From positions 186,001 through 250,000 of IMG/VR virus record IMGVR_UViG_3300042482_000702: a DNA stretch of 64,000 nt; one strand, given 5' to 3'. Position 1 is the stretch's first letter. Every line of letters begins with the position of its first letter. Both the position numbers and the translations under genes were made by a program. Of this stretch, positions 8,403 to 62,308 are shown piece after piece. The notes under the pieces are model-generated. The model saw only the letters and a list, made by a program, of their open reading frames with translations, was not told the DNA's origin and ran no database searches.

Positions 8403-11141
8403 ATGGATATGAAAAAAATCTTAATTATAACCCCCCATTTAAGTACAGGTGGAGCTCCACAAGTAACTCTTAACAAAATAAAGTTGTTAAAAGACGATTG
8501 TATTATTAAATGCGTGGAATATTCCTTTATCGCTTGGAACTACGTCATTCAACGAAATCCACTTGAAAATATGTTATTAGATAATTTTCACTCATTAGGC
8601 GATAATAAATCTGAACTTATTAATATTCTAAAAGATTTTAACCCTGATGTTGTTAGTATGGAAGAATTCCCTGAATTCTTTATGGATGATAATATCACAA
8701 AAGAAATATATAAAGAAGACCGTAGATATACTATTTTTGAAACCACTCACGATTCTAGTTTTCCTGTTACATCAAAAAGATATTTTCCGGATAAATTTAT
8801 ATTTGTAAGTGCTTTTAACGCTTTCAGATATTCTATCTTTGATATTCCATATGAGATAATTGAATATCCTGTAGATGTTAAAATAAAAAATCAAAAAGAG
8901 AATCAAGAGAAATTAGATTTAAGTTCTGATTGGAAACATGTTGTTAATGTTGGTTTATTTACGGCAAGAAAAAATCAAAAATATCTTTTTGAGATTGCCG
9001 AATACTTAAAGAATTATAAAATTAAATTTCATTTTATTGGGAATCAAGCTGATAACTTTAAAGATTATTGGGAACCTTTAATTACTAACAAACCTAAGAA
9101 CGCCATTATTTGGGGTGAGAGAAATGATGTGGATAGTTTTATTCAGGCATCTGATGTGTTTTTCTTTTCATCGAAAGGTGACCGAAATAATAAGGAATTA
9201 AACCCTATCGCAATTAAAGAAGCTTTAGAGTATAAGATACCAATGATGATGTATAATTTGGAGGTTTATTGTGGTAAATACAATGATGAAAAATCAATCA
9301 CTTTTTTAACCGGCGATTTAAAACAAGATTCGGAAAACTTATTAAATATTTTGGGGGTTGAGGTTGATGATTCATTAACTTCCCATATAAATGATGATGA
9401 AGTTATTATTATTAGCACTTATCCTGACACTATTAAACGCAAAAATCTAACAATTGAATGTATTGAGAGTTTTAAACAATTAGGTAGAAAAATTATATTA
9501 GTTTCTCATTATCCGGTACCAAATGAGATACACGAGATGGCGGATTATTATGTTTTTGATTCAAATAATTTGATGATACCTCATTCATATTATACACACT
9601 TCTACAATAATACGAATCAATATAATGCCCAAATAAACATCAATGGATTATCAAATTCAAATCAATCATTGGCGGCACACATGAATTTTATGAATGGTGC
9701 TAAATTAGCCAAAGATATTGGTGCAACCAAATTTATGATAATCACTTATGATGTTATTCTAAATGATTTGGACATACCATTAATTGAAAAATATTTTAAT
9801 AAATTAACAACTTGGAACTGTTGTTTATCTTATATGGACAATGGTATTGAAACAACATCTATGGTGTTTAAAACTAGTTATTTTCTAAATACTTTTTTAG
9901 ACATTACTGATGAAGTAACCTTTAATAATCATTGTTCTGAATTGAAATGTCACAATTTTTTGGAAAATTATTATATGAAAATATTAGAAGGTAAAGAAAA
10001 CCTTTGGATTGAACATAACAATCAAAAAACTATTTTACCGAATTCGGGGTTGGGTGTATCATCTAATTCAGAATATTATTCTATTTTACCAGTTAATGAA
10101 ACTAAAAATAAATGGGTATTCTATTTTTATACTTATAATATTGATAATCGTAGATTAGAATTATCTATTAATAAATCGGGGAAAAACATCTTTAAAGATT
10201 CTATAATTATTTCCGAACGTAAGTCAGATTTAGTTTCGGATAGAGCAAAATATTTTAAACATATTGATTATGACGGAGAACCTATTGAAATTGTCATATC
10301 ATTTTATGATGGAGATAATTTACATAAAACAGAAACTTATGAATTAAATGATATTACAATTCACGAATACTATAACAATGGGTTTTTTAAAGAAAATAAT
10401 CAATCTTTAATATCTAATATTGAATCTCCGAAATATAACATTAAAATATTACATTTACAAACAACTATAAACGATGTTAGAGAACAGTTATCAAGAGAAT
10501 CTCTTCAGAAATTAAATGATTTTGGTTTTAATTATGTTTTACATAAAAATGTTCCGTACACATCATTACCACCGTCACATAATTGTTTAAGACCTCACAA
10601 TGTTAGGTTAGAGAAATACGATAATATTGATGACCCTGAGTACGGAAATGCTTTAACACCGGCTCATTATGGTTGTTTTGATTCATTTAAGTTAGGTATT
10701 TTATCAGAATTTGATAAAGAGTTAGATTTTCTAATTGTTTGTGAAGGTGATTGTATTATTGAAGTCCCTACGGAAGAATTTGTTAATAAAGTTAATATGG
10801 TTTGTGAAATAATTAACAATGAAGACATTTCTTACTTCTCATTTGGTGACACCAAAACATTAGATTTTGGGTGGCACCAATCCAATGAGATTAGAAAAAT
10901 CCCTAATCAAGATTTACTTTTTATCACCGATAAAATAATTGGATTACAATGTGTGATGTTCCCAATAAAAACTAGAGAATATCTTACCAATAAATTAAGA
11001 ACTGAAAAATGGGATTGTATGGATACATTTTTTAACATTATTTTTTCAAATAAAAATATGGGGATATTAAAGAATAGAATAACTACTCAGGCAGACGGAT
11101 TTTCTTTAATCGATAAAGAATTAAAAACATTTATAAAATAA
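8403..11141 (+). CDS. Multi-domain glycosyltransferase: N-terminal GT4 (GT-B), central GT-A-like domain, C-terminal GT25-like domain
   Basis: HLSTGGA...VGLFTARKNQ...SDVFFFSS...ELNPIAIKEAL (GT4); C-terminal HYGCFDS...LIVCEGDC resembles GT25 GC..SH...LILEDD. Confidence 0.7.
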   Translation: MDMKKILIITPHLSTGGAPQVTLNKIKLLKDDCIIKCVEYSFIAWNYVIQRNPLENMLLDNFHSLGDNKSELINILKDFNPDVVSMEEFPEFFMDDNITKEIYKEDRRYTIFETTHDSSFPVTSKRYFPDKFIFVSAFNAFRYSIFDIPYEIIEYPVDVKIKNQKENQEKLDLSSDWKHVVNVGLFTARKNQKYLFEIAEYLKNYKIKFHFIGNQADNFKDYWEPLITNKPKNAIIWGERNDVDSFIQASDVFFFSSKGDRNNKELNPIAIKEALEYKIPMMMYNLEVYCGKYNDEKSITFLTGDLKQDSENLLNILGVEVDDSLTSHINDDEVIIISTYPDTIKRKNLTIECIESFKQLGRKIILVSHYPVPNEIHEMADYYVFDSNNLMIPHSYYTHFYNNTNQYNAQININGLSNSNQSLAAHMNFMNGAKLAKDIGATKFMIITYDVILNDLDIPLIEKYFNKLTTWNCCLSYMDNGIETTSMVFKTSYFLNTFLDITDEVTFNNHCSELKCHNFLENYYMKILEGKENLWIEHNNQKTILPNSGLGVSSNSEYYSILPVNETKNKWVFYFYTYNIDNRRLELSINKSGKNIFKDSIIISERKSDLVSDRAKYFKHIDYDGEPIEIVISFYDGDNLHKTETYELNDITIHEYYNNGFFKENNQSLISNIESPKYNIKILHLQTTINDVREQLSRESLQKLNDFGFNYVLHKNVPYTSLPPSHNCLRPHNVRLEKYDNIDDPEYGNALTPAHYGCFDSFKLGILSEFDKELDFLIVCEGDCIIEVPTEEFVNKVNMVCEIINNEDISYFSFGDTKTLDFGWHQSNEIRKIPNQDLLFITDKIIGLQCVMFPIKTREYLTNKLRTEKWDCMDTFFNIIFSNKNMGILKNRITTQADGFSLIDKELKTFIK

Positions 11142-11152: not shown

Positions 11153-13276
11153 ATGAGAATAACGCAAGTAACACCAGGAGTAATCCCTGTTCCACCTAAT
11201 GGATGGGGAGCCGTCGAAAAAATATTATGGTGCTATTATAAAGAATTTAATTCTTTAGGACACGAATGCACAATTAAATATTTAAACGAAGCGTCGACAG
11301 ATAATTCAGATATAATACATATCCATATCGCTAATTTGGCGTTAGACGCTGCGGAAAGAGGTATTCCTTATATTTTTTCCCTACACGACCATCATGTTGT
11401 TCATTACGGAAAAGATTCGTTTAATTATAAACAAAATTTAGAGGCAATACAAAAATCTGTAATATCATTTTGTCATGCGGAATATTTGGTTGATTACTTT
11501 GATGGGACTGATAAATTATTTTATTTATCTCACGGAGTTGAGGTTGATTATTTTAAAGTGGATAATTTATATAGGTCAGAGCATAAATTACTTTGTATTG
11601 CGAACAATGGTATCGGTGGTGATGTATCGTTTGATAGAAAAGGTTTTAGATACGCTATAGAGGCGGCAAAAAAACTAAATCTTCCAATAACAATTGCCGG
11701 ACCTGAAAATAATAAATCATTTTTTAAACATCATCCTGACTTATTAGAATATGAAAAATTAACGCTATTACTTACTAATTTAGGTGAAGATGAGATTTTA
11801 GAGTTATATAAATCACATTCAATATTTTTACACCCATCAATATTAGAAGCTGGTCACCCAAATTTAACATTATTGGAAGCGGTGTCTTGTGGACTTCCTG
11901 TTGTCGGAACATATGAGGGTTCTCAAAAAATAGATGGTATGGTTGTAACAGAGAGAAACTCTGATTCAGTAGCAAATTCTATTTCGGAAATAGTGGACCA
12001 ATACAAACATTATGTGGATTTAACTCAAAATAATAGAGATAAATTTGATTGGTCAATCATTTGCGAAAGAATGGTTAAAATGTATGAGGTAGTCACCTTA
12101 ATAAAAAAAGAATACACATCTGACGAAACTAAAAATTTATTTATAAAAAATTTTAACAATATAACGAAAACAATGGGATTAATAAACTCAAATAACCAAA
12201 ATGTAAAACCAAATGTAAAATATAATTTTCATTTTGTTAATCAACCTTTTTTTGAAATATTAGGAGATAGCGATAAAAAATTTAATGTTGGATTTTATGA
12301 TAGTGGTGGATTACATCATCACACGGAATTATCGTCAAATATGTGGACTAAAGTAAGTAGAGAATACTTTACAAATTGGTATATCAAAGTTTCTTGTGAT
12401 AATGACATTGTTTTTGAATATAACCTTGATTTAACAAATAGAAGAGTTTTCATTTCTTTTGAATCTAGTTCGTTGGGAGATAGTATTGCTTGGATACCAT
12501 ATGTTTTAGAATTTAAAAAACAACATAATTGTATTGTAATTGTCTCAACTTTTTGGAATAAATTATTTAAAAAATCCTACCCTGAATTAGAATTTGTTGA
12601 ACCAGGTTCAACTGTTAAAAATCTATTTGCGTTATATAGAATTGGATGGTTTGAAAATGAAACAAAGGAACCTTTTTACCCTAACACAATACCATTACAA
12701 AAAACAATCACAAATCTTTTAAAATTAGAACATACAGAAATTAAACCAATACTTGATTTTATACCTAAAGTAAAACCTATGGTTGAAAAATATATAACAA
12801 TAGCCGATGAGTCAACTGCCGGATTAAAACTATGGAATAACCCAAAAGGGTGGCAAGAACTTATTGATTATTTAACCGGATTAGGTTATAAAATTATTAA
12901 TATATCTAAACACGGTGGAAATTATAAAAATGTTACAAAATTAAAAGATACGTCAATAGAAAATACTATGAACTATATTCACCATAGTGAATTTTTTATA
13001 GGGTTATCAAGTGGGTTGTCTTGGCTTTCATGGGCGTTGGGTAAACATGTTGTAATGATTTCTAATTTTACTGAATCTGACCACGAATTTACATCAAATT
13101 GTACTAGGATAACAAATGATTCTGTGTGTAATGGATGTTGGAATAAATCAGAATTTAGGTTTGACCGTGGTGATTGGAACTGGTGTCCCGAACATAAGGG
13201 GACTCCTCGTCAATTTGAGTGTCATAAATCAATAACCTCTGAAATGGTGATAAAACAGATACAACATTTATTATAA
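11153..13276 (+). CDS. GT4 glycosyltransferase fused to a TibC/Aah-family (autotransporter) protein O-heptosyltransferase domain
   Basis: N-term PPNGWGAVE...RKGF...EAGHPNLTLLEAVSCGLPVV (GT4). C-term SLGDSIAW.PY...FFIGLSSGLSWLSWALGK.VVMISNFT...EF and CNGCWN-x-WCP.HK.T.RQFEC, the four-Cys iron site of the TibC/Aah family. Confidence 0.85.
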   Translation: MRITQVTPGVIPVPPNGWGAVEKILWCYYKEFNSLGHECTIKYLNEASTDNSDIIHIHIANLALDAAERGIPYIFSLHDHHVVHYGKDSFNYKQNLEAIQKSVISFCHAEYLVDYFDGTDKLFYLSHGVEVDYFKVDNLYRSEHKLLCIANNGIGGDVSFDRKGFRYAIEAAKKLNLPITIAGPENNKSFFKHHPDLLEYEKLTLLLTNLGEDEILELYKSHSIFLHPSILEAGHPNLTLLEAVSCGLPVVGTYEGSQKIDGMVVTERNSDSVANSISEIVDQYKHYVDLTQNNRDKFDWSIICERMVKMYEVVTLIKKEYTSDETKNLFIKNFNNITKTMGLINSNNQNVKPNVKYNFHFVNQPFFEILGDSDKKFNVGFYDSGGLHHHTELSSNMWTKVSREYFTNWYIKVSCDNDIVFEYNLDLTNRRVFISFESSSLGDSIAWIPYVLEFKKQHNCIVIVSTFWNKLFKKSYPELEFVEPGSTVKNLFALYRIGWFENETKEPFYPNTIPLQKTITNLLKLEHTEIKPILDFIPKVKPMVEKYITIADESTAGLKLWNNPKGWQELIDYLTGLGYKIINISKHGGNYKNVTKLKDTSIENTMNYIHHSEFFIGLSSGLSWLSWALGKHVVMISNFTESDHEFTSNCTRITNDSVCNGCWNKSEFRFDRGDWNWCPEHKGTPRQFECHKSITSEMVIKQIQHLL

Positions 13277-13277
13277 C

Positions 13278-13303
13278 AAAAAACCCCAATTAAGGGGTTT
13301 TTT
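13278..13303. terminator. Bidirectional intrinsic terminator between convergent genes
   Basis: aaaaaacccc-aattaa-ggggtttttt hairpin with A/T tails on both sides. Confidence 0.85.
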
Positions 13304-14178
13304 TATTGTTTTCTAATTGAATCTATAATTTGATTTACATCAAAAATTTCATTTAAGTCATTATACGGAATACTTGTCATATCTTGGAATAATAAATATT
13401 TAGAGTAATGACCATGGTCTAACATTAGTTCTTTTGTTGGTGTGTTAGCCATTATATTTGTATTGGTGTGGTATCCAAATACATTAGGGTTAGTTCCAAC
13501 CCAAGTAACAACAGATGGAAGATTTAATGATGCCGCAATGTGCATAACACTTGAATCTATTAATAATCGTTTTTTAGATAAACTCAATAAAATTGCAATA
13601 CTTCTAAAATCATCTAACGCTTGTAAAGTGTCTTCATAAACAAATTGGTCTTCTCTTTTAATGTGAAGAATTGCGTAATCATTTTTAAAATATCTAATCA
13701 CTTCCTCTATTGTTGGTTGAGGTATATCACGAGTCCAACTATATTTTAAAGGTTGTCCTACAGCACCACCATTTGGTTGTATAACCATAATTGGTTTATC
13801 CACTTTATAGAATTGTGTGAAGTATTGTTTTTCGGCTTCAGATATAAAAATTTCAGGTAATTCACCTCTATACTCAACACCAAACATTTCACACCAAATC
13901 TGAATTAAGTGTTTAGATTCCGTAATGTAATCTGATGTTTGATATGGTTCACCAACAAACACTTTGGCGTCTTGGTCCATAATGTACTTAGCGTACAGCC
14001 CTGATAATTGTCCGTGATTTAATACCTTGTTCATATTTGGATTGTTAATAAAAACATCCGGAAAACCAGTTACTACAATTATATAACCGTCAGGGTATTG
14101 TCTTCTAATGGCTTTTAATACGGCGGTTCCCATTACGGATTTCCCCAATCCACCTTCTATTGAAAATATTATATTCAT
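13303..14178 (-). CDS. GT9-like (ADP-heptose:LPS heptosyltransferase fold) glycosyltransferase
   Basis: GGLGKSVMGTAVLKAIRRQYPD at N-term; IDSSVMHIAASLNLPSVVTWVGTNP..FGY matches the GT9 DSG.MH.A.A...P motif. Confidence 0.75.
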   Translation of the reverse strand: MNIIFSIEGGLGKSVMGTAVLKAIRRQYPDGYIIVVTGFPDVFINNPNMNKVLNHGQLSGLYAKYIMDQDAKVFVGEPYQTSDYITESKHLIQIWCEMFGVEYRGELPEIFISEAEKQYFTQFYKVDKPIMVIQPNGGAVGQPLKYSWTRDIPQPTIEEVIRYFKNDYAILHIKREDQFVYEDTLQALDDFRSIAILLSLSKKRLLIDSSVMHIAASLNLPSVVTWVGTNPNVFGYHTNTNIMANTPTKELMLDHGHYSKYLLFQDMTSIPYNDLNEIFDVNQIIDSIRKQ

Positions 14179-14190: not shown

Positions 14191-14637
14191 TTAATTGTTT
14201 AATATTTTTTTTATACATTCATTAACACCAATACTTGTTGTGTCAATATCAATAAAGTTTTCTGTTGGAGGTTCATAGTCATCAACAAACAAATTCTCCC
14301 TACCTCTAATTTCGGATGTGTGAACATAAATCTCTGTGATTTTTCTACCCATCTTTTTTTTAAATTTATCTCTTTGGTCTTTATATGGTGATACTAATGA
14401 AACAACAATATTAACACTTTGAGAACTGAGATATTGGGACATTTGTTGAGCAAGTTGAATATTTTTTCTTCTACCATCTTCAGAATAATCTTTATTATCA
14501 AATAAATCTCTAATATCATCACCATCAATGTGGAAACATAATTCCCTTTTAATATCAATAAGTGATGAAGATAATTCTTTTCCCAATGTTGTTTTACCAG
14601 CGCCCGGCTGACCTGTTATCCAATATATGTTAGACAT
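14191..14637 (-). CDS. cysC: Adenylylsulfate (APS) kinase, compact form; likely start 14637 rather than 14718
   Basis: WITGQPGAGKTT P-loop, IDGDDIR, DYS..GR..NI, VSLVSPY...R, EIYV, YEPP; ATG overlaps the sulfotransferase stop. Confidence 0.85.
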   Translation of the reverse strand: MSNIYWITGQPGAGKTTLGKELSSSLIDIKRELCFHIDGDDIRDLFDNKDYSEDGRRKNIQLAQQMSQYLSSQSVNIVVSLVSPYKDQRDKFKKKMGRKITEIYVHTSEIRGRENLFVDDYEPPTENFIDIDTTSIGVNECIKKILNN

Positions 14638-15451
14638 ACCCAAAATAATCATAAAACCATTTATAATGATTCTTAATGTTGGTTGATAATTCATAACCCA
14701 ATATATCCAAATAATCATCCGGTAATTTTCTAAATTCTTTTCTCAATACATGGTCACCATATATACCGTGAACAACATCATTTTCGTTTGTCACCTGTTC
14801 GATATATTCAAAATTGTGTTCTTGATACATTGGTTGTCCAACATAGTCGTAAAATCGTTTTAATTCTCTTTCAGGGTTATCCATCAAATCCTCGTATCTA
14901 ATAAATAAAATTTTAGTATGAAGTCCTTGTTGGAAGATATCTTGTAGTCGGTCTAATGTCACACCAACCGGTGGACCACTAGCCCAAATATCTATTCGTT
15001 TGTTTACAGTTGTTCCAACCAATTCGTTTGGGTTCTGTATATGATTTTCTTTGTGGGGGTTTTTTCTGAAGTTTTTTTCCATTGAGGAATAGACACATCT
15101 AATGTCTCTAACCATACAAACAATCTTTGGGTCTTCTTTGAATAAACTCAATAGATTGTAATTAATACCCCACCCTCGACTCTTGTCTAACACATATGGT
15201 TTATCTGTTAATTCCTCAAAGAATCCTTGAATCCCTTTTCTACAAAAATTAATGAATGCTTTTTCCATTAATTTGGGGTCTTGTGCTCTAATTTCTTGAG
15301 AACCATTATAATGATTTTTAGCTCCCGATACCAACTCAATTAATCCTGAAGTTGGGGTTACGTAAAATTGGGGGTTTTGTCCGATTAAATTTTGAAATAG
15401 GGTTGACCCTGCTCTAGGTAGAGAAGAGTTAAAAAAGATTATCTTATCCAT
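14630..15451 (-). CDS. PAPS-dependent sulfotransferase
   Basis: 5'-PSB loop SLPRAGSTL, 3'-PB motif KIVCMVRD...VYSS, IRYEDL...P. Confidence 0.85.
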   Translation of the reverse strand: MDKIIFFNSSLPRAGSTLFQNLIGQNPQFYVTPTSGLIELVSGAKNHYNGSQEIRAQDPKLMEKAFINFCRKGIQGFFEELTDKPYVLDKSRGWGINYNLLSLFKEDPKIVCMVRDIRCVYSSMEKNFRKNPHKENHIQNPNELVGTTVNKRIDIWASGPPVGVTLDRLQDIFQQGLHTKILFIRYEDLMDNPERELKRFYDYVGQPMYQEHNFEYIEQVTNENDVVHGIYGDHVLRKEFRKLPDDYLDILGYELSTNIKNHYKWFYDYFGYV

Positions 15452-18224: not shown

Positions 18225-21200
18225 TTATGTTGTTTGTGTTATTATAATATCTACCGTCATATTTGCGTCAGGTGGAAATTGAGAGTAAAATGTTGCGACT
18301 CCTGAAGCAACACCTACATAAGGTAATACTTGTGCGTTATACGCTGTTAGATAACTTGCATTTTGTGGTGTGACAGATACATCACAATTTGCGGTAATAT
18401 TTACATTACTGAATGAGTATGTGTAATATCCTGACACTAATGTCCACGATGATGCGGTTAATGTTTGACCTGTAAGTTTAATTGGTGTTGAACCTCCACC
18501 ACCTGAACTTGTTCCACTAGTACCTGACATTCCTGATGTTCCCGCAATACCATTTTCTCCTGATGTCCCTGATGAACCACTAACCCCTATTCCACTTGTT
18601 CCACTAGAACCTGCGGCTCCTGATGTTCCTGAAGAACCGCTATTACCAGTACTACCAGATGTTGTTACTAATAAACCATTTGCTCCAACACAGATTGAAC
18701 ATCCCGATGAACCAGTGAAACTACAAACAGATAAGTCATTAACAAATGTTGTACACGCTCTATTCGCTGTTATATTACTACCTATGATGTTAGAATGAGG
18801 AAAGGAAGATGATATTGTGTTTAATTGACCACCAAGGATTGATGAATAAGAACTAGAAACAGAATTACAACAACCACCACCGACTGTTGACAAAGGGCTA
18901 AAAGTTTTATTACCTTTACCACCAGCAATTGTTGAACAATTTCCACAACTAGCGTTACCATAACCACCACCAATAAATGATGTTGTCCCCGATGCAATGT
19001 TACTTATACCACCAACAACAACAGACGCACATCCAAAAGCTGTGTTACCAATATAAGTCAAAGGGTCCCAAAATCCACCACCAACGAATGAATAGTAACC
19101 TAAAGCACAATTACCTTTACCACCACCAATTGTTGAGGAACGACCACAAGCCCTATTACTCCTACCACCCGCAATTGTTGAGTAGTAACCGTTGGCATGA
19201 TTAGCATCACCCCCTCCAACTGTTGATATATACTTAGCACAATTATTAGAACCACCAGCGATTGTTGCAGTTGAACACGTAGTATAATTACCCTGACCAC
19301 CACCAATGGTTGAGATACTACCGCTACAAATATTATTACTATAACCACCACCAATTGTTGTATAAGCACCTGAACCTGTCTTATTACGACAACCACCACC
19401 AATAGTTTGATTAAGATAAGAGGTAACATTATAGGCACCACCACCAATGGTTGAACAATGTCCCGTTGCAGAGTTTTTAAATCCACCACCAACTGTTGAG
19501 GTATTTCCTGAAGAAATATTAAAATGACCACCACCGATGGTTGTATGAACTCCACCGACAGTGTTACAACGACCTCCACCAATGGTTGTAAAACCAACAT
19601 AAGGAGTTGAGGTATTACAATAACCTCCTCCTATTGTATTACCACCAGTATTTAAACTAACCCCTCCATATACGTTTGTATTAATAGTATTTTTATTTCC
19701 ACCGTTAATAACATCACCTATTCTTGGAGATGTATTATTATAGTTTTGTGATGGAAATATTCTGTTACAACAACCACCACCGATAAATGATGTTGTTCCT
19801 GACGATACATTATTTTGACCTCCAACAACTGTCGAAAAATTACATGATGCAGTATTTCCACTACCCGCTAATGCGGCTGAAAAACACGATGATGCTGTAT
19901 TATTAACACCACATCTAATAGTCGAATTAACACCTGTTCCGGTAATGATTATACTATCACCACCTCCACCACCAGAAGCAACAGGAATTAATAAACCATT
20001 TGCTCCAACACAGATTGAACATCCAGATGACCCAGTAAAACTACAAACAGATAAGTCATTAACAAATGTTGTACAAGTTCTATTTGCGGTTATATTACTA
20101 CCTATGATGTTAGAATGAGGAAAGGAAGATGATATTGTGTTTAATTGACCACCAAGGATTGATGAAAAATTACCACAAACAACATTACGAAAACCACCAT
20201 TAATGGTATTACATCCATATTCAGGAAATATATTGTTACAATAACCACCATTAATGGTATTACCACCAACAATATTATATGCACCACTATTTGAGTGGAT
20301 AGTATTACAACCACCTCCTCCAATAATATTTGGTATAATACTATAAAGATTACCGTTAGTGGTAAAATTACAAATAGTGTTACAACATCCACCACCAATT
20401 GTTGAGTTATCAGCAATAGCTCTATTTAATACACCACCGCCAATTGTAATATTACATCCAACAACTGTTCCGGTACAAGATGTGTTTGTAAAAGTGAGTG
20501 TTTGTCCGGCAGTAAAATAAGTGTTTGTTGGGATTTTTGTAAGTCCCGATGAATAGTTTACACCATACGTACAAGATATAACCGCAACACAATTAACCCA
20601 TTTATTTGTTTGGTTGTAAACCATTAATGTTGTTGAGTAAGGGGTAAATTGACTAACAAGATTACCTGAAACATATATATATGCACCATTAACACAAACG
20701 GAGTTAAATCTTGGTGTGTTTGAAATAAAATTCATTACTCCACCACCAATAGTTGACACAGGACCTTTTGATATATTACCTTGACCACCACCAATAACTG
20801 AACAACCATTAAATATGATATTATCACCTCCTCCTCCAATTGTTGAGGTATTACCAGACGAGATATTACTAATACCTCCACCAACTGTTGAACAATTACC
20901 TGTTGCGCGGTTACTTATACCACCACCAATAAATGATGTTGTTCCTGATGCAACATTACCTAGTCCACCAACAACAGCAGACGCAAATCCGAAAGCTGTG
21001 TTACTAATATAAGTTGTACCCTCTCTACATCCACCACCAACGAATGAATAGTCACCTAAAGCACAGTTATACCACCCACCACCAATTGTTGAAGATTTCC
21101 CACATGCTTTATTACTTCTACCACCACCAATTGTTGAGTAGAAACCTTTGGCACAATTATTACCACCACCTCCAACTGTTGATATATATGTAGCGCAATT

Positions 21201-23795
21201 ACCCACACCACCACCAATTGTTGCTTGACTATAATTAACTCTATTACCTTGACCACCACCAATTGTTGGATAATTACCACTATAAATATTATTATCTGAA
21301 CCACCACCAATAGTTCCTCCAATACTCGCACCCATTTTATTTTGAACACCACCACCAATAGTTTGATTACAATAAGAGGTAACATTATAGGCACCACCAC
21401 CAATGGTTGAACACGCTCCCATTGCAGAGTTTCTAAATCCACCACCAATGGTTGATAATCTACCAGAGTTAAAACAATCAATTGTTTCGGTTAAATAACC
21501 TGTATACATATCAAATGTCCCACCTGATGAGTTATGTCCAATACCTCCTCCAATTGTTACACCTAATGAACTACATTCGTCAGTTGGTGATTGAATTGTA
21601 TTTCTTTGTCCACCACCTATTATTGAGAATCTAGCGTTTGTCGTGTTTCCACTACCACCTAATGCTGCTGAAAAATTTGCCGAAGCAATATTACCAACAC
21701 CACATCTCATAGTTGAATTAACTCCTGTTCCTGTAATGATTATACTATCACCACCTATTGGACTTGTTCCACTTGTTCCTGCTGAACCTGTTTCACCACT
21801 AGTTCCTGAAGAACCACTCTCACCACTTGTTCCTGATGTTCCGTTATCACCACTTGTTCCGCTAGAACCTGTTTCACCACTTGTTCCTGCTGAACCTGTT
21901 TCACCACTAGTTCCTGAAGAACCACTCTCACCACTTGTTCCTGATGTTCCGTTATCACCACTTGTTCCGCTAGAACCTGTTTCACCACTTGTTCCTGAAG
22001 AACCACTAGAACCTGATGTTCCGTTATCACCACTTGTTCCTGAAGAACCACTAGTCCCACTTTCACCTGATGTTCCCGAAGAACCACTTGTTCCGGATGT
22101 TCCATTAGCTCCACTTGTTCCACTAGAACCTGACGAGCCATAAACAGCTCCAAGAGTTGTTATTACATAAGAATAATTGGTTGTACCTTCCGTATACCAC
22201 GTAACATCACGATTCCCATTTGATTGGTCAACTACATAAATTTTAACAATCATTCTATCAGTTGGAAGAATAGTAAATGATGTTGGTATAACTAAATCAA
22301 CATATACTTCAACAGGTAAAATAGAACCAATCCAACCAATTTCTATTTGATTTGTTGAGAGGGGTGTTCCTGAATATGGTGTTCCAGTACTATCGGCTAG
22401 TTCTATTGTGCAGAATGTGTCTGTTAAAAATGATTGTCCACTTTTTAAGAAATGTAAATGGAATCTCTGTACTCCTGGTGGAATAACGGTAACACCTAAC
22501 CCTGATGAATCAGTTATAAAAGTGTCGACTAACACAGGTGTTAACCCTGTTGTTGTTCTCGTTACTGTTTGAGTAGTTGCTGTTGTTGCTGATGAACTAA
22601 TCTGTTTATACGATAACGGTGTTTGTGTTACGGATTCATTAAAATAAAATATTTGTCCTGATGAAATACCGTTTTCTCCTGATGAACCACTTGTCCCGCT
22701 AGAACCACTTGTCCCGCTAGAACCTGAAGAACCTGATGTTCCTGAAGAACCCGAAGTTCCGTCAATACCGCTAGTACCTGAAGTTCCGTCAATACCGCTA
22801 GTCCCTGAAGAACCAGAAGTTCCGTCAATACCGCTAGTGCCTGATGTTCCGTCAATACCGCTAGTTCCACTTGACCCTGAAGTTCCGTCAATACCGCTTG
22901 TCCCCGAAGTTCCTGAAGTTCCGTCAATACCGCTAGTCCCTGAAGAACCAGATGTTCCGTCAATACCGCTAGTTCCTGAAGAACCAGATGTTCCTGAAGA
23001 ACCTGAAGTTCCGTCAATACCGCTAGTTCCACTTGACCCTGAAGTTCCGTCAATACCGCTAGTTCCACTTGACCCTGAAGAGCCGCTAGAGCCTGACGAA
23101 CCTGATGTACCATCAATTCCGCTAGTACCCGATGTACCATCAATCCCGGTGGTATCAATAGATACGGTTGCACCGTCATTTCTATATAAATCTAAAGTAG
23201 ATGTTGCGGAAAAATAAGTTCCTCCCGTAACATATATATCTTGTATTGCTGTTGCAAATTTTCTCCATCTAGCATTAATTCGTGTGACACCATCAACATC
23301 TTCAATCGTTGACCCTGTCCAAGTATTAATAAATAATTGACCTTCTAAAGAATTATTTTTAACTGTTGTCCCAAAATCTGATATAACGACAGTATCACCC
23401 CCAGGTCCTGACGCGCCTAAAGCGTCAGACCATAATGTGTTATAATTATCTATTGAAAATTGATATACTTGGTCTGTTTCATATACATAAACCAACATAC
23501 CCAATCGTCTTCTACCTGATGAAATATTGTCAGAATTTAAAGTTATAGTGTCAAATGAGAATGAACTATTAATCCCTTTATAAAATTGGATAGGAATAGT
23601 ATTACCCGAAAATTCAATATCACCGGTATCTCCAAAAGGTATGGTATAAATTAAATCATTTAAGGTGTAAACCTCCATAAAACCCCCCGTATTTAAAACG
23701 CTAAATGTTGTTCCAAATGTGCTAGTTCTTAATGAAGATTGACTCCCTAAAGCGATTATAGGTGATAATGGGTTTTTATAATTTAAATTAGACAT
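18225..23795 (-). CDS. Giant fibre protein (1856 aa) with Pro-free Gly-X-Y (GTS/GSS) tracts and a duplicated Cys-rich STIGGG beta-helix region
   Basis: Long (GTSGSS/GID/GET)n tracts; dozens of S(T/F)(I/V)GGG..N repeats; two copies of GGDSIIITGTGVNST.RCGV...CSICVGANGLL. Confidence 0.8.
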   Translation of the reverse strand: MSNLNYKNPLSPIIALGSQSSLRTSTFGTTFSVLNTGGFMEVYTLNDLIYTIPFGDTGDIEFSGNTIPIQFYKGINSSFSFDTITLNSDNISSGRRRLGMLVYVYETDQVYQFSIDNYNTLWSDALGASGPGGDTVVISDFGTTVKNNSLEGQLFINTWTGSTIEDVDGVTRINARWRKFATAIQDIYVTGGTYFSATSTLDLYRNDGATVSIDTTGIDGTSGTSGIDGTSGSSGSSGSSGSSGTSGIDGTSGSSGTSGIDGTSGSSGTSGSSGTSGIDGTSGSSGTSGIDGTSGTSGTSGIDGTSGSSGTSGIDGTSGTSGIDGTSGSSGTSGIDGTSGTSGIDGTSGSSGTSGSSGSSGTSGSSGTSGSSGENGISSGQIFYFNESVTQTPLSYKQISSSATTATTQTVTRTTTGLTPVLVDTFITDSSGLGVTVIPPGVQRFHLHFLKSGQSFLTDTFCTIELADSTGTPYSGTPLSTNQIEIGWIGSILPVEVYVDLVIPTSFTILPTDRMIVKIYVVDQSNGNRDVTWYTEGTTNYSYVITTLGAVYGSSGSSGTSGANGTSGTSGSSGTSGESGTSGSSGTSGDNGTSGSSGSSGTSGETGSSGTSGDNGTSGTSGESGSSGTSGETGSAGTSGETGSSGTSGDNGTSGTSGESGSSGTSGETGSAGTSGTSPIGGDSIIITGTGVNSTMRCGVGNIASANFSAALGGSGNTTNARFSIIGGGQRNTIQSPTDECSSLGVTIGGGIGHNSSGGTFDMYTGYLTETIDCFNSGRLSTIGGGFRNSAMGACSTIGGGAYNVTSYCNQTIGGGVQNKMGASIGGTIGGGSDNNIYSGNYPTIGGGQGNRVNYSQATIGGGVGNCATYISTVGGGGNNCAKGFYSTIGGGRSNKACGKSSTIGGGWYNCALGDYSFVGGGCREGTTYISNTAFGFASAVVGGLGNVASGTTSFIGGGISNRATGNCSTVGGGISNISSGNTSTIGGGGDNIIFNGCSVIGGGQGNISKGPVSTIGGGVMNFISNTPRFNSVCVNGAYIYVSGNLVSQFTPYSTTLMVYNQTNKWVNCVAVISCTYGVNYSSGLTKIPTNTYFTAGQTLTFTNTSCTGTVVGCNITIGGGVLNRAIADNSTIGGGCCNTICNFTTNGNLYSIIPNIIGGGGCNTIHSNSGAYNIVGGNTINGGYCNNIFPEYGCNTINGGFRNVVCGNFSSILGGQLNTISSSFPHSNIIGSNITANRTCTTFVNDLSVCSFTGSSGCSICVGANGLLIPVASGGGGGDSIIITGTGVNSTIRCGVNNTASSCFSAALAGSGNTASCNFSTVVGGQNNVSSGTTSFIGGGCCNRIFPSQNYNNTSPRIGDVINGGNKNTINTNVYGGVSLNTGGNTIGGGYCNTSTPYVGFTTIGGGRCNTVGGVHTTIGGGHFNISSGNTSTVGGGFKNSATGHCSTIGGGAYNVTSYLNQTIGGGCRNKTGSGAYTTIGGGYSNNICSGSISTIGGGQGNYTTCSTATIAGGSNNCAKYISTVGGGDANHANGYYSTIAGGRSNRACGRSSTIGGGKGNCALGYYSFVGGGFWDPLTYIGNTAFGCASVVVGGISNIASGTTSFIGGGYGNASCGNCSTIAGGKGNKTFSPLSTVGGGCCNSVSSSYSSILGGQLNTISSSFPHSNIIGSNITANRACTTFVNDLSVCSFTGSSGCSICVGANGLLVTTSGSTGNSGSSGTSGAAGSSGTSGIGVSGSSGTSGENGIAGTSGMSGTSGTSSGGGGSTPIKLTGQTLTASSWTLVSGYYTYSFSNVNITANCDVSVTPQNASYLTAYNAQVLPYVGVASGVATFYSQFPPDANMTVDIIITQTT
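18669..20166. repeat. ~178-bp near-identical direct repeat (18669-18846 and 19989-20166) ending each duplicated beta-helix module
   Basis: taataaaccatttgctccaacacagattgaacatcc...ccaccaaggattgatgaa at a 1320-bp offset. Confidence 0.85.
21760..22140. repeat. Gly-X-Y Ser/Thr coding repeat tract with a higher-order duplication
   Basis: GTSGESGSSGTSGETGSAGTSG units repeated. Confidence 0.85.
22670..23145. repeat. Gly-X-Y Ser/Thr coding repeat tract (GIDGTSGSSGTS)n
   Basis: ttccgtcaataccgct(a/t)gt core repeated about 9 times. Confidence 0.9.
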
Positions 23796-34029: not shown

Positions 34030-34625
34030 TGGAATATAATAATTTAGATTTTTTAGAGGAAAAGGCTAAAGAATTAAGACAAAGATTAGAGGGTGATTTC
34101 GAAGATTTAGATATGACCGAAATGATGAATGAATTGGGTGTTGATATTAAAGATTTAGAGGATAAAATGTTAAATCATAGAACTAAACTACCTTTACAAT
34201 TTAATAAATTACATCCCGACGCAACAACACCAAAATATAATTACGAAGGAGATTCAGGGTTTGATTTACATTCTATTGATGAGATAATCATACCCCCATT
34301 TGGAAGAGCATTAGTCCCTACTGGATTATCTTTTGATATTAAAGATGGGTATGAAATTCAAGTTAGAACCAAAAGTGGTTTAGCCATTAATCAGGGTCTT
34401 ATGATATTAAATTCTCCCGGAACAGTTGATTCGTCATACACTGGAGAAATAAAGGGGATTATTTTTAATACTAACCCTTTTGAATTTACAATACCTAAAG
34501 GTATGAAAATAGGTCAAGCTGTCTTATGTCCCGTTGTAAATGGGGGGTGGGTTGACTTGGTAGAAGTTAATAAAATAAACGAAAAAGATAGAGGTGAAAA
34601 TGGATTTGGAAGTACAGGGATATAA
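34029..34625 (+). CDS. dut: Trimeric dUTPase with N-terminal extension
   Basis: GDSGFDL, RTKSGLA, NSPGTVDSSYTGE, IGQAV, RGENGFGSTG (motifs I-V). Confidence 0.95.
   Translation: MEYNNLDFLEEKAKELRQRLEGDFEDLDMTEMMNELGVDIKDLEDKMLNHRTKLPLQFNKLHPDATTPKYNYEGDSGFDLHSIDEIIIPPFGRALVPTGLSFDIKDGYEIQVRTKSGLAINQGLMILNSPGTVDSSYTGEIKGIIFNTNPFEFTIPKGMKIGQAVLCPVVNGGWVDLVEVNKINEKDRGENGFGSTGI
34577..34607 (+). repeat. 31-bp exact direct repeat, copy 1
   Basis: aaacgaaaaagatagaggtgaaaatggattt. Confidence 0.95.
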
Positions 34626-39572: not shown

Positions 39573-39620
39573 ACATTTAAATTAAAAGAAGTATTCTTAT
39601 AAAATAAAAACAATTATAAA

Positions 39621-41237: not shown

Positions 41238-41241
41238 CACA

Positions 41242-60241: not shown

Positions 60242-62308
60242 TTAATAAGTTTTATTTAGTATAAAGATATCACTATAGATGTTGTTTCCTGTAGATGCAG
60301 CACCCCATTCAGCTGTAACATTTAATGTATTACTGATTGTTGTATCGAATGTTGTGTTATTCAATACGTTAAATCCGAATCCTTGGACAGAAGCATTGTT
60401 AGTTTTTGTGTAATGGAAACTACCTAAAGAAACAATTGATGCTACAGTAGTAGTTCCAACTTGTCTAATTGTAAAATCAACATTTAAAGACCACACATCG
60501 TCTACAACACTGCTTCCAAGAGATTGTACACCACTATCTAAAAGAATTGTAGACCCTGTTCTCATTCTAATTATAATAGTTTGATTATTGTTTGCATTCA
60601 TAACACCACCAAAAACTGCTCTAAAACTATCTCCAACACTAAAACCATTAGCAGGTACACTTAATGTACCAACTCCTGTACCAATTAAAGTTGATTCAGT
60701 TATTGTATCGCTCACAATAGTACTGTTAGCTGTTTGTACATATAGTCCATATACTAATGGTGCTGGAAAAACTGGTGAAGTACCACTAGAACCTGAAGAA
60801 CCACTCGTTCCCGAAGAACCGCTAGTTCCTGATGAACCATCAATCCCCGCAATTGCCGGTGATAATGTTGTTGTTACTTGTCCGATACTTGCATCGTTAA
60901 AGTACATTGTAAGTACTTTAGTGTAAGGTGAATTAATAGCTATACCATATAATTCTATAAGAATTCTATCTGACGGTACAATATTAGATGCCGGAATAGG
61001 TATTGACCATAGTTTTAAAGTAGGGACAAGGTAATTATCTATCGGGACAGGAATAGGTGTAGTTGTAGATAACAATGTAGTTGTTCCACCAGTATGATAC
61101 GCATATACTCTTGCATATATTCCGTGGTCAGCGTTTACTGCCGTAGTATTAACGTATAATTCAAAATTCCAATTTCCACCCACAATATTACTAATATTGG
61201 GGTCATTATTAGGTGTTATAAATGTCCCAAATAATTGTGCTGTTGTTCCTGATAATGTTTGAGATAAAGATGTTTGTCCGCTAATACTAATTACCCGGTT
61301 TAAATCATAATATGATGCACTTCCATCACCTTGGTTAGGTGTATCTCTATTGAAGTAATAAACTAACCCTGTTGAAAATCCGTTAATACCGCTTGTTCCT
61401 GATGAACCGCTTGGTCCCATAGAACCTGAATTCCCATTTACCCCACTCGTTCCCGATGAACCACTTGTTCCGCTTGAACCATTGGCCCCTGATGTTCCCG
61501 ATGAACCACTTGTTCCGCTTGAACCATTTCCACCTGCAGCACCTCCTAAATTAACGAGCCAAGATGAATAATTCCCCGAACCTACTATATTACTAATATC
61601 AACAACCATATCACCATTTGACGGGTTATAACTAACAACCATACCAATCATATGGTTTGAGAGGTCATAGGCTATAATTACGTCTTGAGCAATACTATAC
61701 CCTAAGTTAGTCCCAACAACAAAAGTCCCTGTACTTCCTGTTTGGATTGTTAAAGGTGTCGAAGATGTTGTTCTATATAAATCACCTGAAAAACCACTAG
61801 AACCTGATGAACCACTTGTTCCTGATGAACCTGATGTTCCACTTGAGCCGCTAGTCCCTGAAGTACCGTTAGTACCAACACATATTCCATTATCTATAAT
61901 GGTTGCGCCACCATCCGCAAATATCTCACCTGACATATAACAATCTGTATATGTCATTCCAGCACTTACCGTACCAATTTGAATGATGTAATTACAAGTT
62001 GTTCCTGTATAATTTATGGTGGTAATACCACCACTATTATCAATCGTATAACTTTTACAAGTTTGACCATTTATTCCCGATGTTCCACTAGTTCCCGATG
62101 TTCCACTAGTTCCTGATTCACCACTAGTTCCTGATTCACCACTTGTTCCCGATGAACCGCTAGCTCCCGAAAATTGTTGAGTTAAGGCTGAAAAATAAAT
62201 TGAATTGGTTTCTCCTGACGGGATAACATCGTAGTTTACAATAACCATCAACGAGTCTGATTGACCGGATGATACTAATGGTAATTGTGATATAGGTAAA
62301 TTAGGCAT
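60242..62308 (-). CDS. Fibre-like protein with Gly-X-Y Ser/Thr tracts; shares a globular domain with the 1856-aa fibre
   Basis: MPNLPISQLP start; four GTSGSS tracts; G.S.G.(I/V).YFN...FIT...P.DR(M/I).(V/I)..Y domain. Confidence 0.7.
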   Translation of the reverse strand: MPNLPISQLPLVSSGQSDSLMVIVNYDVIPSGETNSIYFSALTQQFSGASGSSGTSGESGTSGESGTSGTSGTSGTSGINGQTCKSYTIDNSGGITTINYTGTTCNYIIQIGTVSAGMTYTDCYMSGEIFADGGATIIDNGICVGTNGTSGTSGSSGTSGSSGTSGSSGSSGFSGDLYRTTSSTPLTIQTGSTGTFVVGTNLGYSIAQDVIIAYDLSNHMIGMVVSYNPSNGDMVVDISNIVGSGNYSSWLVNLGGAAGGNGSSGTSGSSGTSGANGSSGTSGSSGTSGVNGNSGSMGPSGSSGTSGINGFSTGLVYYFNRDTPNQGDGSASYYDLNRVISISGQTSLSQTLSGTTAQLFGTFITPNNDPNISNIVGGNWNFELYVNTTAVNADHGIYARVYAYHTGGTTTLLSTTTPIPVPIDNYLVPTLKLWSIPIPASNIVPSDRILIELYGIAINSPYTKVLTMYFNDASIGQVTTTLSPAIAGIDGSSGTSGSSGTSGSSGSSGTSPVFPAPLVYGLYVQTANSTIVSDTITESTLIGTGVGTLSVPANGFSVGDSFRAVFGGVMNANNNQTIIIRMRTGSTILLDSGVQSLGSSVVDDVWSLNVDFTIRQVGTTTVASIVSLGSFHYTKTNNASVQGFGFNVLNNTTFDTTISNTLNVTAEWGAASTGNNIYSDIFILNKTY

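What the first reader, a model, noticed from the sequence alone, without database searches (positions are those of the whole stretch)
12200..13276. Intact TibC/Aah-type protein O-heptosyltransferase domain in a phage, fused to a GT4
The C-terminal half has the SLGD catalytic-base motif, FIGLSSGLSWL.WA and a four-Cys cluster spaced C-x2-C-x15-C-x11-C (nt ~13127-13222). As I recall it, this is the iron-binding arrangement of the family. The family is characterised from proteobacterial adhesin loci, and I see no autotransporter beta-barrel in this window. The fusion suggests priming and elongation in a single chain.
Basis: partly seen in the sequence, partly recalled or inferred. Interest (0 to 1): 0.8.

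Follow-up and report, generated by a model that had tools for sequence, protein, structure and literature searches.

The report
Phage TibC-like protein glycosyltransferase fused to GT4
A 322-kb phage encodes an intact two-module sugar-transferring enzyme whose second half has the fold and iron-binding cysteines of the bacterial adhesin-glycosylating enzyme TibC, and gene neighbourhoods suggest that it decorates the phage's own serine/threonine-rich tail fibres, not an autotransporter.

Summary
ORF 11153-13276 (+, 707 aa) is an uninterrupted GT4 + TibC-like fusion. The C-terminal half scores 280.6 bits on NCBIfam TIGR04414 (cut-off 200). It matches TibC crystal structures by sequence (E 4e-48) and by predicted fold (TM 0.82-0.84). 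It keeps the catalytic Asp, the phosphate and sugar contacts Thr/Lys/Trp, and the C-x2-C-x15-C-x11-C iron finger at nt 13127-13222.

It is not a classical autotransporter heptosyltransferase. The adenine-contacting Arg-286 is Thr. The dodecamer-forming beta-hairpin thumb is 10 residues shorter and lacks its hydrophobic tip. It falls outside the autotransporter-linked clade. The whole phage genome has no AIDA repeat, no autotransporter barrel and no heptose pathway.

The domain belongs to a large, mostly viral and uncharacterised family: at least 584 IMG/VR contigs and 764 50%-identity clusters, nearly always at the C-terminus of multi-domain enzymes. In phages and in bacterial MAGs these genes lie next to proteins built of Gly-Ser/Thr-Ser/Thr collagen-like repeats. 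In the window that protein is the 1856-aa tail fibre about 5 kb away.

Best reading: cytoplasmic O-glycosylation of phage fibre proteins. The donor sugar (heptose or another) is unresolved. This is a new variant of a known kind.

The parts
11153..13276 (+). 707-aa ORF: GT4 + TibC-like two-module glycosyltransferase
   Evidence: dN/dS 0.04-0.14 against L010/L011/L012.
11153..12112 (+). GT4 (retaining GT-B) module, aa 1-320
   Evidence: Pfam PF00534 E 1.3e-13 and PF13692 E 4e-12. Foldseek hits MshA, BshA, PimA and tll1591. pLDDT about 90.
12119..12208 (+). Helical linker; disordered at aa 342-352
   Evidence: AlphaFold2 model: helix 323-346, pLDDT below 50 at 342-352.
12215..12424 (+). Eight-stranded beta-barrel (aa 355-424), equivalent to the TibC N-terminal barrel
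   Evidence: DSSP strands 355-424. The TibC alignment covers about 373 of about 381 resolved residues. TibC barrel is residues 1-97 (PMC4358343).
12443..13273 (+). TibC-like GT9 catalytic domain, aa 431-707
   Evidence: TIGR04414 280.6 bits. PF01075 E 1e-4. TibC E 4e-48.
12470..12481 (+). SLGD; D443 aligns with the TibC catalytic base Asp-110
   Evidence: alignment (the D110A structure 4rb4 has Ala at this position). Invariant in 280/280 domains.
12806..12841 (+). DESTAGLKLWNN; T555 and K559 align with the TibC beta-phosphate contacts Thr-226 and Lys-230
12908..12949 (+). Shortened remnant of the beta-hairpin thumb, without the Phe-Val tip
   Evidence: The segment between GY579 and G617 is 37 aa here and 47 aa in all five autotransporter-linked BAHTs. 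Thumb function from PMC4358343.
12965..12967 (+). T605 at the position of TibC Arg-286, the adenine N1 contact
12995..13036 (+). FIGLSSGLSWLSWA. S619 sits at the TibC Pro-300 / AAH Ser-294 position. W624 aligns with Trp-305 (heptose O4 contact).
13127..13222 (+). Four-Cys iron-finger motif C659-x2-C662-x15-C678-x11-C690, plus F688 (TibC Phe-368)
   Evidence: Cys present in 273/280 domains.
8403..11141 (+). Upstream 912-aa protein, 11 nt from the next start. GT4 at aa 164-290 plus two unassigned regions. Full-length partner only in the closest relatives.
13303..14178 (-). 291-aa GT9-like protein with G-L-G-K in place of G-D
   Evidence: PF01075 E 3.6e-4, below the cut-off. Homologues in 15 of 80 loci, all with Lys.
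14191..15451 (-). APS kinase (175 aa) and sulfotransferase (273 aa)
   Evidence: PF01583 E 7e-19; PF13469 E 1e-14. A sulfotransferase homologue is present in 16 of 80 loci.
18225..23795 (-). 1856-aa tail fibre and candidate acceptor. Collagen-like G-T/S-S runs at aa 217-378, 553-678 and 1714-1763. 15-aa STIGGGxxNxASGxx beta-solenoid repeats at aa about 780-1030 and 1336-1640.
   Evidence: PHROG tail-fibre families E 2e-41. Pfam Collagen E 3.5e-41. Repeats. Solenoid model.
60242..62308 (-). 688-aa collagen-like tail-fibre protein with the same GTSGSSGTSG repeats (second candidate acceptor in the window)

Best explanation
The ORF encodes a soluble, two-module glycosyltransferase made in the infected cell.

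Shown:
- The C-terminal module has the TibC architecture: beta-barrel, GT9-type GT-B core and a four-Cys finger. It keeps the catalytic base and the phosphate and sugar contacts.
- The N-terminal module is an intact GT4.
- Both modules are under purifying selection.
- The gene sits inside the tail-fibre module, among other glycan-tailoring genes.

Inferred:
- The TibC-like module O-glycosylates Ser (or Thr) of the phage's own fibre proteins in the host cytoplasm before virion assembly.
- The best candidate acceptors are the collagen-like Gly-Thr/Ser-Ser repeats, and perhaps the 15-residue STIGGG beta-solenoid coils, of the 1856-aa fibre.
- The fused GT4 and the neighbouring enzymes (912-aa GT, GT9-like protein, sulfotransferase with APS kinase) extend and decorate the glycan.

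The sugar donor must come from the host. [quoted passage not shown] Loss of the adenine-contacting Arg leaves another nucleotide sugar possible. A TibC-style dodecamer ring is unlikely because the thumb is truncated.
For: Enzyme identity and integrity:
- TIGR04414 280.6 bits against a cut-off of 200.
- TibC E 4e-48 by sequence.
- AlphaFold2 pLDDT 91 and Foldseek TM 0.82-0.84 to TibC.
- D443, T555, K559, W624 and the four Cys are conserved here and in 273-280 of 280 related domains.
- dN/dS is 0.04-0.14 in both halves.

Phage setting:
- Flanked by tail-fibre and virion genes on both sides.
- The nearest ESM Atlas clusters are 74-100% viral.
- At least 584 IMG/VR contigs carry a relative. In 78 of 80 loci examined the domain is found, at the C-terminus in nearly all, in a 700-1900 aa multi-domain ORF.

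Acceptor:
- 52 of 78 phage loci have Gly-(S/T)-(S/T) repeats within 10 kb.
- Matched control in the same 20 phage records: 16/20 TibC-like loci against 2/20 distant 20-kb regions, Fisher p 1.7e-5.
- In 13 of 18 MAG loci the standalone TibC-like gene has such repeats nearby, and within 1.5 kb in 11 of them. Those inspected in three loci are small lipoproteins made almost only of these repeats.
- None of 5 true autotransporter BAHT loci has such repeats.
- The same decapeptide GTSGSSGTSG occurs in the window fibre and in the MAG lipoproteins.
- The cultured Microcystis phage Mel-JY01 shows the same pairing.
- TibC modifies Ser in a beta-solenoid (Ser-313 in N-S-G-G; PMC4358343), and the fibre's STIGGG segment is predicted to be a beta-solenoid.
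Against: - No biochemical data exist for any member of this clade.
- Linkage to fibre genes could partly reflect simple residence in the structural module.
- Some of the 20 control records are near-duplicates, so the effective sample is smaller.
- 26 of 78 phage loci show no such repeat within reach, although many of those loci are truncated.
- Arg-286 is lost, and R286A impaired TibC.
- No heptose genes are present in the phages, and the host is unknown.
- The tree is unrooted and was built with a quick search.
Confidence: 0.5

Rival explanations
1. Same enzyme and acceptor class, but the donor is not ADP-heptose. The clade would have switched to another nucleotide sugar available in hosts that lack heptose.
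For: - Arg-286, which contacts adenine N1 and is given as the basis of ADP specificity, is Thr here. It is T/V/I/L/A in most of the clade and Arg in 5/5 autotransporter-linked BAHTs.
- No gmhA or rfaE in this genome, and no gmhA in 48 related phage records.
- Mel-JY01 infects Microcystis. Cyanobacterial LPS is generally reported to lack heptose (my own knowledge, not tested).
- The Synechococcus elongatus control genome gave no GmhA match.
Against: - Trp-305 (heptose O4 contact) and the Thr/Lys phosphate contacts are invariant.
- As far as I know, the transfers characterised in the GT9 family are mainly from ADP-heptose.
- The paper itself calls the Arg-adenine contact weak.
- Some clade members next to G-S/T lipoproteins keep Arg.
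Confidence: 0.35
2. The enzyme, with the surrounding glycosyltransferase and sulfotransferase genes, remodels a host envelope glycan or host surface protein during infection (an auxiliary gene for surface conversion or superinfection exclusion). It would not act on the virion.
For: - Many glycosyltransferase, methyltransferase and sulfotransferase genes in the window resemble polysaccharide clusters.
- Phage-encoded heptosyltransferases have been read as LPS auxiliary genes in huge phages (PMC10747093).
Against: - The best HMM is the protein-acting TibC family, not LPS heptosyltransferases (17.5 bits against a cut-off of 185).
- The TibC-specific barrel and iron finger, which take part in protein-substrate binding, are kept.
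- The gene lies inside the fibre module and is linked to G-S/T repeat proteins.
- No flippase or polymerase genes turned up in the ORFs I scanned.
Confidence: 0.12
3. A classical BAHT carried by the phage to heptosylate a host autotransporter adhesin.
For: The HMM score is over the equivalog cut-off.
Against: - No AIDA repeat and no autotransporter domain in the genome.
- It lies outside the autotransporter-linked clade, which has SH-aLRT 100.
- The thumb and Arg-286 are lost.
- Relatives are overwhelmingly viral.
Confidence: 0.04
4. A decayed or purely structural domain without catalysis.
For: One TibC ligand-binding residue and the thumb are missing.
Against: - The catalytic Asp and the Lys and Trp are invariant in 278-280 of 280 domains.
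- dN/dS is 0.04-0.14.
- The model is confident.
Confidence: 0.03

Closest known systems
TibC (ETEC H10407; PDB 4RAP, 4RB4) and AAH (DAEC): bacterial autotransporter heptosyltransferases (BAHT)
   Same: - Beta-barrel + GT9-type GT-B core + four-Cys finger with identical spacing.
- Catalytic Asp, Thr/Lys phosphate contacts and Trp sugar contact are kept.
- Ser at the AAH Ser-294 position.
- Both are cytoplasmic enzymes that modify a repetitive Ser-rich adhesion protein encoded nearby.
   Different: - Only about 30% identity.
- Fused behind a GT4.
- Arg-286 is replaced by Thr.
- The thumb is 10 aa shorter and has no hydrophobic tip, so the dodecamer is doubtful.
- No autotransporter partner.
- Separate clade.
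- The neighbours are collagen-like or solenoid fibre proteins.
LPS heptosyltransferases WaaC and WaaF (GT9)
   Same: GT-B fold, N-terminal G-D catalytic motif and Lys phosphate contact. There is a weak Pfam PF01075 match.
   Different: TIGR02193 scores 17.5 bits against a cut-off of 185. WaaC and WaaF have no barrel and no Cys finger, and their acceptor is a lipid-linked sugar.
Mycobacteriophage virion glycosylation (Freeman et al. 2023, cited in PMC12619734)
   Same: Phage-encoded glycosyltransferases that modify the phage's own structural proteins in the host cytoplasm.
   Different: Those are unrelated GT families acting on C-termini of capsid and tail-tube subunits. Here the enzyme is a TibC-fold type and the candidate acceptors are fibre repeats.
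Glycosylated collagen-like proteins such as Bacillus anthracis BclA (my own knowledge, not checked here)
   Same: Gly-X-Thr-type collagen-like repeats of a surface filament that carry O-linked oligosaccharides with methylated sugars.
   Different: Different glycosyltransferases, a spore surface instead of a phage fibre, and no iron-finger enzyme.
Uncharacterised metagenomic and phage proteins auto-named 'autotransporter strand-loop-strand O-heptosyltransferase' (for example P0003, P0010, P0029), and the Microcystis phage Mel-JY01 1226-aa protein annotated 'methyltransferase FkbM'
   Same: True homologues at 40-97% identity. They share the same GT4-TibC-like fusion or longer versions of it.
   Different: These are names given by automatic annotation only. 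I found no study of them.

Membership tests
BAHT (TibC/AAH) family, NCBIfam TIGR04414 | Score over the curated HMM cut-off | tested here: met
   280.6 bits against 200; 282.1 bits in the genome search.
BAHT (TibC/AAH) | Protomer fold: N-terminal beta-barrel + GT-B catalytic core + Cys-finger insertion | tested here: met
   AlphaFold2 pLDDT 91. Foldseek to 4rap/4rb4: TM 0.82-0.84, about 373 columns.
BAHT (TibC/AAH) | Catalytic base Asp-110 | tested here: met
   D443 aligned; invariant in 280/280 domains.
BAHT (TibC/AAH) | Donor contacts Thr-226, Lys-230 and Trp-305 | tested here: met
   T555, K559 and W624.
BAHT (TibC/AAH) | Arg-286 contact to adenine N1 (ADP-sugar specificity) | tested here: not met
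   Thr-605 here; Arg in 5/5 autotransporter-linked BAHTs.
BAHT (TibC/AAH) | Four Cys of the iron finger (C339, C342, C358, C370) | tested here: met
   C659, C662, C678 and C690 with the same spacing.
BAHT (TibC/AAH) | Bound ferric ion | not testable with these tools
   Needs metal analysis of purified protein.
BAHT (TibC/AAH) | Beta-hairpin thumb with two hydrophobic tip residues (Phe-265, Val-266) that builds the dodecamer | tested here: not met
   The segment is 37 aa against 47 aa and has no G-F-V-W-N-H-I-P tip. The actual oligomeric state cannot be tested here.
BAHT (TibC/AAH) | Adjacent AIDA-type autotransporter substrate | tested here: not met
   PF16168 and PF03797 are absent from the whole genome. 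Real BAHT loci have the autotransporter next door.
BAHT (TibC/AAH) | Placement inside the autotransporter-linked clade | tested here: not met
   The five BAHTs form one clade (SH-aLRT 100). The query is in a separate supported group of 7. The tree is unrooted and from a quick search.
BAHT (TibC/AAH) | Transfer of heptose to Ser of a protein | not testable with these tools
   Needs an enzyme assay and mass spectrometry.
GT4 (Glycos_transf_1) | Pfam match over the gathering score, and a GT-B fold | tested here: met
   PF00534 51.2 bits against 26.4. Foldseek hits MshA, BshA and PimA.
GT4 (Glycos_transf_1) | Canonical E-x7-E motif | tested here: inconclusive
   The sequence reads E232-x9-E242 (EAGHPNLTLLEA), a spacing variant. 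I did not do residue-level superposition.
LPS heptosyltransferase I/II (WaaC/WaaF) | Score over the equivalog HMM cut-off | tested here: not met
   TIGR02193 17.5 bits against 185.3.

The most novel reading that the evidence does not exclude
The window's gene would represent a large, mainly viral and so far unstudied family of cytoplasmic iron-finger protein O-glycosyltransferases. Their natural acceptors would be collagen-like Gly-Ser/Thr-Ser/Thr repeats: phage tail fibres and, in bacteria, small Tat/Sec lipoproteins. On this reading the autotransporter heptosyltransferases of enteric pathogens would be one specialised offshoot that acquired a dodecamer thumb and strict ADP-heptose use. The phage enzymes would be modular assembly lines (methyltransferase, GT4, GT2 and TibC-like domains in one chain) that build sulfated or methylated glycans on fibres, possibly from a non-ADP donor.
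Probability: 0.4. Interest if true: 0.8.

Novelty: new variant of a known kind. Interest (0 to 1): 0.68.

Why it matters
Glycosylation of phage virions has been documented in very few systems. It bears on host recognition, on stability and on how phages are seen by antibodies.

This is a recognisable protein-glycosylating enzyme present in hundreds of environmental phages, with a concrete candidate substrate encoded nearby. A cultured relative, Microcystis phage Mel-JY01, makes the question testable.

It also changes the picture of the TibC/AAH family. The pathogen adhesin enzymes would be a small branch of a much larger family with a different acceptor class, no dodecamer thumb and perhaps a different donor. 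The bacterial loci that pair the enzyme with Gly-Ser/Thr lipoproteins point to a second unstudied protein glycosylation system.

Tried and rejected
- Heptose supply by the phage: gmhA, rfaE domain I and rfaE domain II are absent. The only hit to the heptose epimerase model is a generic SDR at window 35198-36157 (47 bits against 275). gmhA is also absent from 48 related phage records.
- Conserved protein partner by synteny: the 912-aa upstream GT looked near-universal (77 of 80 loci), but most of those hits were GT4 cross-matches inside the same ORF. The full partner occurs in only about 7 close loci.
- BspA-type LRR protein (16040-18220) as acceptor: homologues are near the gene in only 2 of 80 loci.
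- STIGGG-repeat fibres as the general partner: only 8 of 42 loci with enough downstream sequence have one, and 5 of 24 STIGGG-bearing contigs carry a TibC-like gene over the cut-off. They are enriched but not general. The G-S/T collagen-like repeats fit better.
- Fold of the STIGGG segment: predicted as a beta-solenoid, but no PDB match with E below 0.1.
- Pfam on the middle and C-terminal parts of the 912-aa protein and on the barrel region: nothing significant. I dropped a GT25-like impression I had from reading the sequence.
- PHROGs: no family covers the TibC-like half.
- Literature searches for TibC or heptosyltransferase in phages found nothing relevant.
- Host: the terminase is only 28% identical to those of Mel-JY01 and the Flavobacterium immuto phages, so the host is left unknown.
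- The genome-contig scan depended on two peptide patterns and returned only 18 MAG loci, so the bacterial distribution is under-sampled.
Full report
**The observation.** ORF 11153-13276 (+) is an uninterrupted 707-aa frame.
- Its N-terminal third matches GT4 families (PF00534 E 1.3e-13, PF13692 E 4e-12).
- Its C-terminal half scores 280.6 bits on NCBIfam TIGR04414 'autotransporter strand-loop-strand O-heptosyltransferase' (cut-off 200; aa 385-705). LPS heptosyltransferase I reaches only 17.5 bits against a cut-off of 185.
- phmmer against PDB sequences finds only TibC (4rap, 4rb4; E 4e-48; aa 397-699) for this half.
The Cys spacing is the same as the TibC ligands Cys-339/342/358/370 (PMC4358343).

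**Structure.**
- An AlphaFold2 model built on 52 homologues has mean pLDDT 91.1.
- It shows a GT4 domain (aa 1-320), a helical linker with a disordered stretch (342-352), an eight-stranded barrel (355-424) and the catalytic domain (431-707).
- Foldseek against the PDB ranks 21 TibC chains first (E 2.5e-33 to 1.3e-26, TM normalised to target 0.80-0.84, rmsd about 3 A, about 373 columns). So the barrel, core and finger all superpose. The next hits are GT4 enzymes (MshA, BshA, PimA, tll1591) for the N-terminal module.

**Is it a phage, and is there an autotransporter?**
- The window is bases 186001-250000 of a 322,477-bp IMG/VR record rated 100% complete.
- It has a gp17-type large terminase at genome 249006-250775. 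Its nearest cultured relatives are only 28% identical (Microcystis phage Mel-JY01 and the Flavobacterium immuto phages). It also has tail-fibre proteins (PHROG E 2e-41).
- Neither the AIDA repeat (PF16168) nor the autotransporter beta-domain (PF03797) occurs anywhere in the genome.
- The host is unknown.

**Residue-level comparison with TibC.** The eLife structure paper (PMC4358343) names these residues:
- Asp-110 as the catalytic base;
- Thr-226 and Lys-230 on the beta-phosphate;
- Trp-305 on heptose O4;
- Arg-286 on adenine N1, given as the basis of ADP-sugar use, with R286A impairing activity;
- Pro-300 (Ser-294 in AAH) for D,D versus L,D-heptose choice;
- the four Cys, and the thumb tip Phe-265/Val-266 plus Phe-368, for the dodecamer.

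Here D443, T555, K559, W624, F688 and the four Cys are conserved. Position 300 is Ser, as in AAH. Arg-286 is Thr-605.

The segment carrying the thumb is 37 aa here. It is 47 aa, with a G-F/M/Y-V/I-W-N-H-I-P tip, in all five autotransporter-linked BAHTs I fetched.

Across 280 related domains the Asp and Trp are invariant, the Lys is present in 278 and the Cys are present in 273. The Arg-286 position is T in 166, R in 37 and aliphatic in most others.

**The family.**
- A word-seeded search returned 2981 proteins at E<=1e-10. The best 120 are mostly 60-97% identical, almost all come from metagenomes, and many are auto-named as the heptosyltransferase.
- An exhaustive HMMER scan of 50%-identity representatives found 764 clusters at E<=1e-30. 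All of the top 150 score far above TibC, and most are 500-2000 aa fusions. Some carry two to four tandem TibC-like domains.
These include complete genomes of only 61-115 kb, so the family is not confined to jumbo phages.
- I examined 80 of these loci. In 78 of them the domain is found, at the C-terminus in nearly all, in a 700-1900 aa ORF.
- The exact 700-aa GT4-TibC-like layout recurs at 53-90% identity.
- The nearest ESM Atlas clusters are 74-100% viral.
- PHROGs v4 has no family for this half, and I found no paper on it.
- In a quick maximum-likelihood tree of 111 domains, the five autotransporter-linked BAHTs form one long-branched clade (SH-aLRT 100). The query sits in a separate supported group of seven environmental sequences. 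The tree is unrooted.
- dN/dS against three relatives is 0.04-0.14 in each half.

**Donor.**
- The genome lacks gmhA and both rfaE domains. Its only match to the heptose epimerase model is a generic SDR.
- None of 48 other TibC-like-bearing phage records, including seven that are at least 90% complete, and Mel-JY01, encodes GmhA.
- The donor must therefore be a host metabolite.
[quoted passage not shown] Loss of the adenine contact leaves the nucleotide, and thus the sugar, open.

**Acceptor.** The gene sits in the fibre module.
- Upstream on the minus strand are a ConA-like-lectin virion protein and a Ser/Thr-rich 779-aa protein.
- Downstream on the minus strand are a GT9-like gene, an APS kinase, a sulfotransferase, a BspA-type LRR protein, the 1856-aa fibre and a DUF285 protein.
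- The 1856-aa fibre has long collagen-like runs of G-T-S / G-S-S triplets (aa 217-378, 553-678, 1714-1763). It also has two blocks of a 15-residue repeat, STIGGGxxNxASGxx. That repeat is modelled as an all-beta solenoid (core pLDDT above 90) with no close PDB analogue.

No single neighbour family is universal, but one sequence feature is common.
- Gly-(S/T)-(S/T) repeats lie within 10 kb in 52 of 78 phage loci.
- In 20 phage records, the TibC-like locus has them in 16 and a distant 20-kb control region in 2 (Fisher p 1.7e-5; some records are near-duplicates).
- Independently, 13 of 18 MAG loci with a standalone TibC-like gene have such repeats, and in 11 of these they lie within 1.5 kb. The repeat proteins inspected in three of these loci (L096, L098, L101) are small lipobox proteins, three with a Tat-like twin-arginine signal and a poly-acidic tail.
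- These MAG loci fall into at least five separate branches of the tree.
- The five genuine autotransporter loci have none.
- The decapeptide GTSGSSGTSG is shared by the window's fibre, the window's 688-aa fibre protein and the MAG lipoproteins.
- Mel-JY01, a cultured phage, has a collagen-like G-S/T ORF about 1.7 kb upstream of its GT4-...-TibC-like gene. That ORF is hidden by annotation on the opposite 'shadow' strand.

**Mechanism proposed.**
- Shown: an intact, selected, TibC-fold enzyme fused to a GT4, embedded among fibre and glycan-tailoring genes, and statistically linked to G-S/T repeat proteins.
- Inferred: virion proteins fold in the host cytoplasm, where only soluble protein glycosyltransferases can act. 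The TibC-like module puts the first sugar on Ser/Thr of fibre repeats. The fused GT4 and neighbouring transferases extend the glycan, and the PAPS-dependent sulfotransferase decorates it.
- The truncated thumb and the bulky N-terminal fusion argue against a TibC-type 12-mer ring. [quoted passage not shown]

**Verdict.**
- The domain belongs to the TibC/AAH family in the broad (HMM and fold) sense. It fails four features that define the characterised autotransporter heptosyltransferases: the Arg-286 contact, the thumb, the adjacent autotransporter and clade membership.
- I therefore file it as a new variant of a known kind, with an open donor and a testable new acceptor class.

Noticed in passing
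L096:6447-6878(-), L096:9179-9826(-), L098:9118-9417(-), L101:5890-6480(-), L101:6633-7055(-): In proteobacterial MAGs, standalone TibC-like genes sit beside small lipoproteins made almost only of G-S/T-S/T triplets. In L096 and L101 they end in a poly-Asp/Glu tail. Three have a twin-arginine (Tat-like) signal before the lipobox. 13 of 18 MAG loci have such repeats. This may be an unstudied bacterial protein glycosylation system.
   Followed up: partly
window 13303-14178 (-): A 291-aa GT9-like protein has G-L-G-K where GT9 and TibC enzymes have the catalytic G-D. The Lys is conserved in all 15 homologues found near TibC-like genes. A second neighbour family (313 aa, in other loci) keeps G-D.
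   Followed up: partly
window 14191-15451 (-): An APS kinase and a sulfotransferase lie next to the glycosyltransferases, which suggests phage-driven PAPS synthesis and sulfation of a glycan or protein. A sulfotransferase homologue is present in 16 of 80 related loci.
   Followed up: partly
window 18225-23795 (-); genome 70077-77468 (-): Two giant fibre proteins (1856 and 2463 aa) carry dozens of 15-residue STIGGGxxNxASGxx coils, many with Cys. The repeat is predicted to be a beta-solenoid with no PDB match below E 0.1. A DNA pattern for two coils 15 aa apart hits at least 119 IMG/VR stretches.
   Followed up: partly
L009:1-2298 and L004:14089-21930: Over collagen-like G-S/T repeats the opposite strand is also open (a P-E-V-P-L-V 'shadow' frame). 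The GenBank CDSs of Mel-JY01 and a JGI gene call lie on the shadow strand. The G-S/T frame is longer and continues into non-repeat domains.
   Followed up: yes
P0005, P0006, P0046, P0128, P0138 (metagenome proteins): Some proteins contain two to four tandem TibC-like domains in one chain (for example 924 aa with three copies, including a Tara Oceans member).
   Followed up: no
window 8403-11141 (+): The 912-aa upstream protein has a GT4 at aa 164-290. About 600 further residues match no Pfam or PHROG family. It ends 11 nt before the TibC-like ORF and is conserved at full length (51-90% identity) in the closest relatives.
   Followed up: partly
window 34594-43117 (+): A second sugar-tailoring island holds a methyltransferase, an SDR epimerase/dehydratase, an NDP-hexose C-methyltransferase-type protein (Methyltransf_13/14) and three GT2-like proteins. 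PhoH is interleaved and a dUTPase lies just upstream.
   Followed up: no
window 2699-5866 (-), 16040-18220 (-), 25560-29318 (-): The fibre module also encodes a ConA-like lectin (Laminin_G_3) virion protein, a BspA-type LRR_5 protein with 29% Ser+Thr and 31 Cys, and a DUF285 protein. All are likely host-binding parts.
   Followed up: no
L012:11047-11418 and 28 other loci: A roughly 124-aa helical protein (DUF6165 where annotated) lies directly next to the TibC-like gene in 29 of 80 phage loci. It is absent from this genome by blastp.
   Followed up: partly
window 63006-64000 (-), continuing to genome 250775: The large terminase (589 aa, T4 gp17 type) starts outside the window. Its best cultured relatives are only 28% identical, so the phage lineage has no close isolate.
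   Followed up: partly
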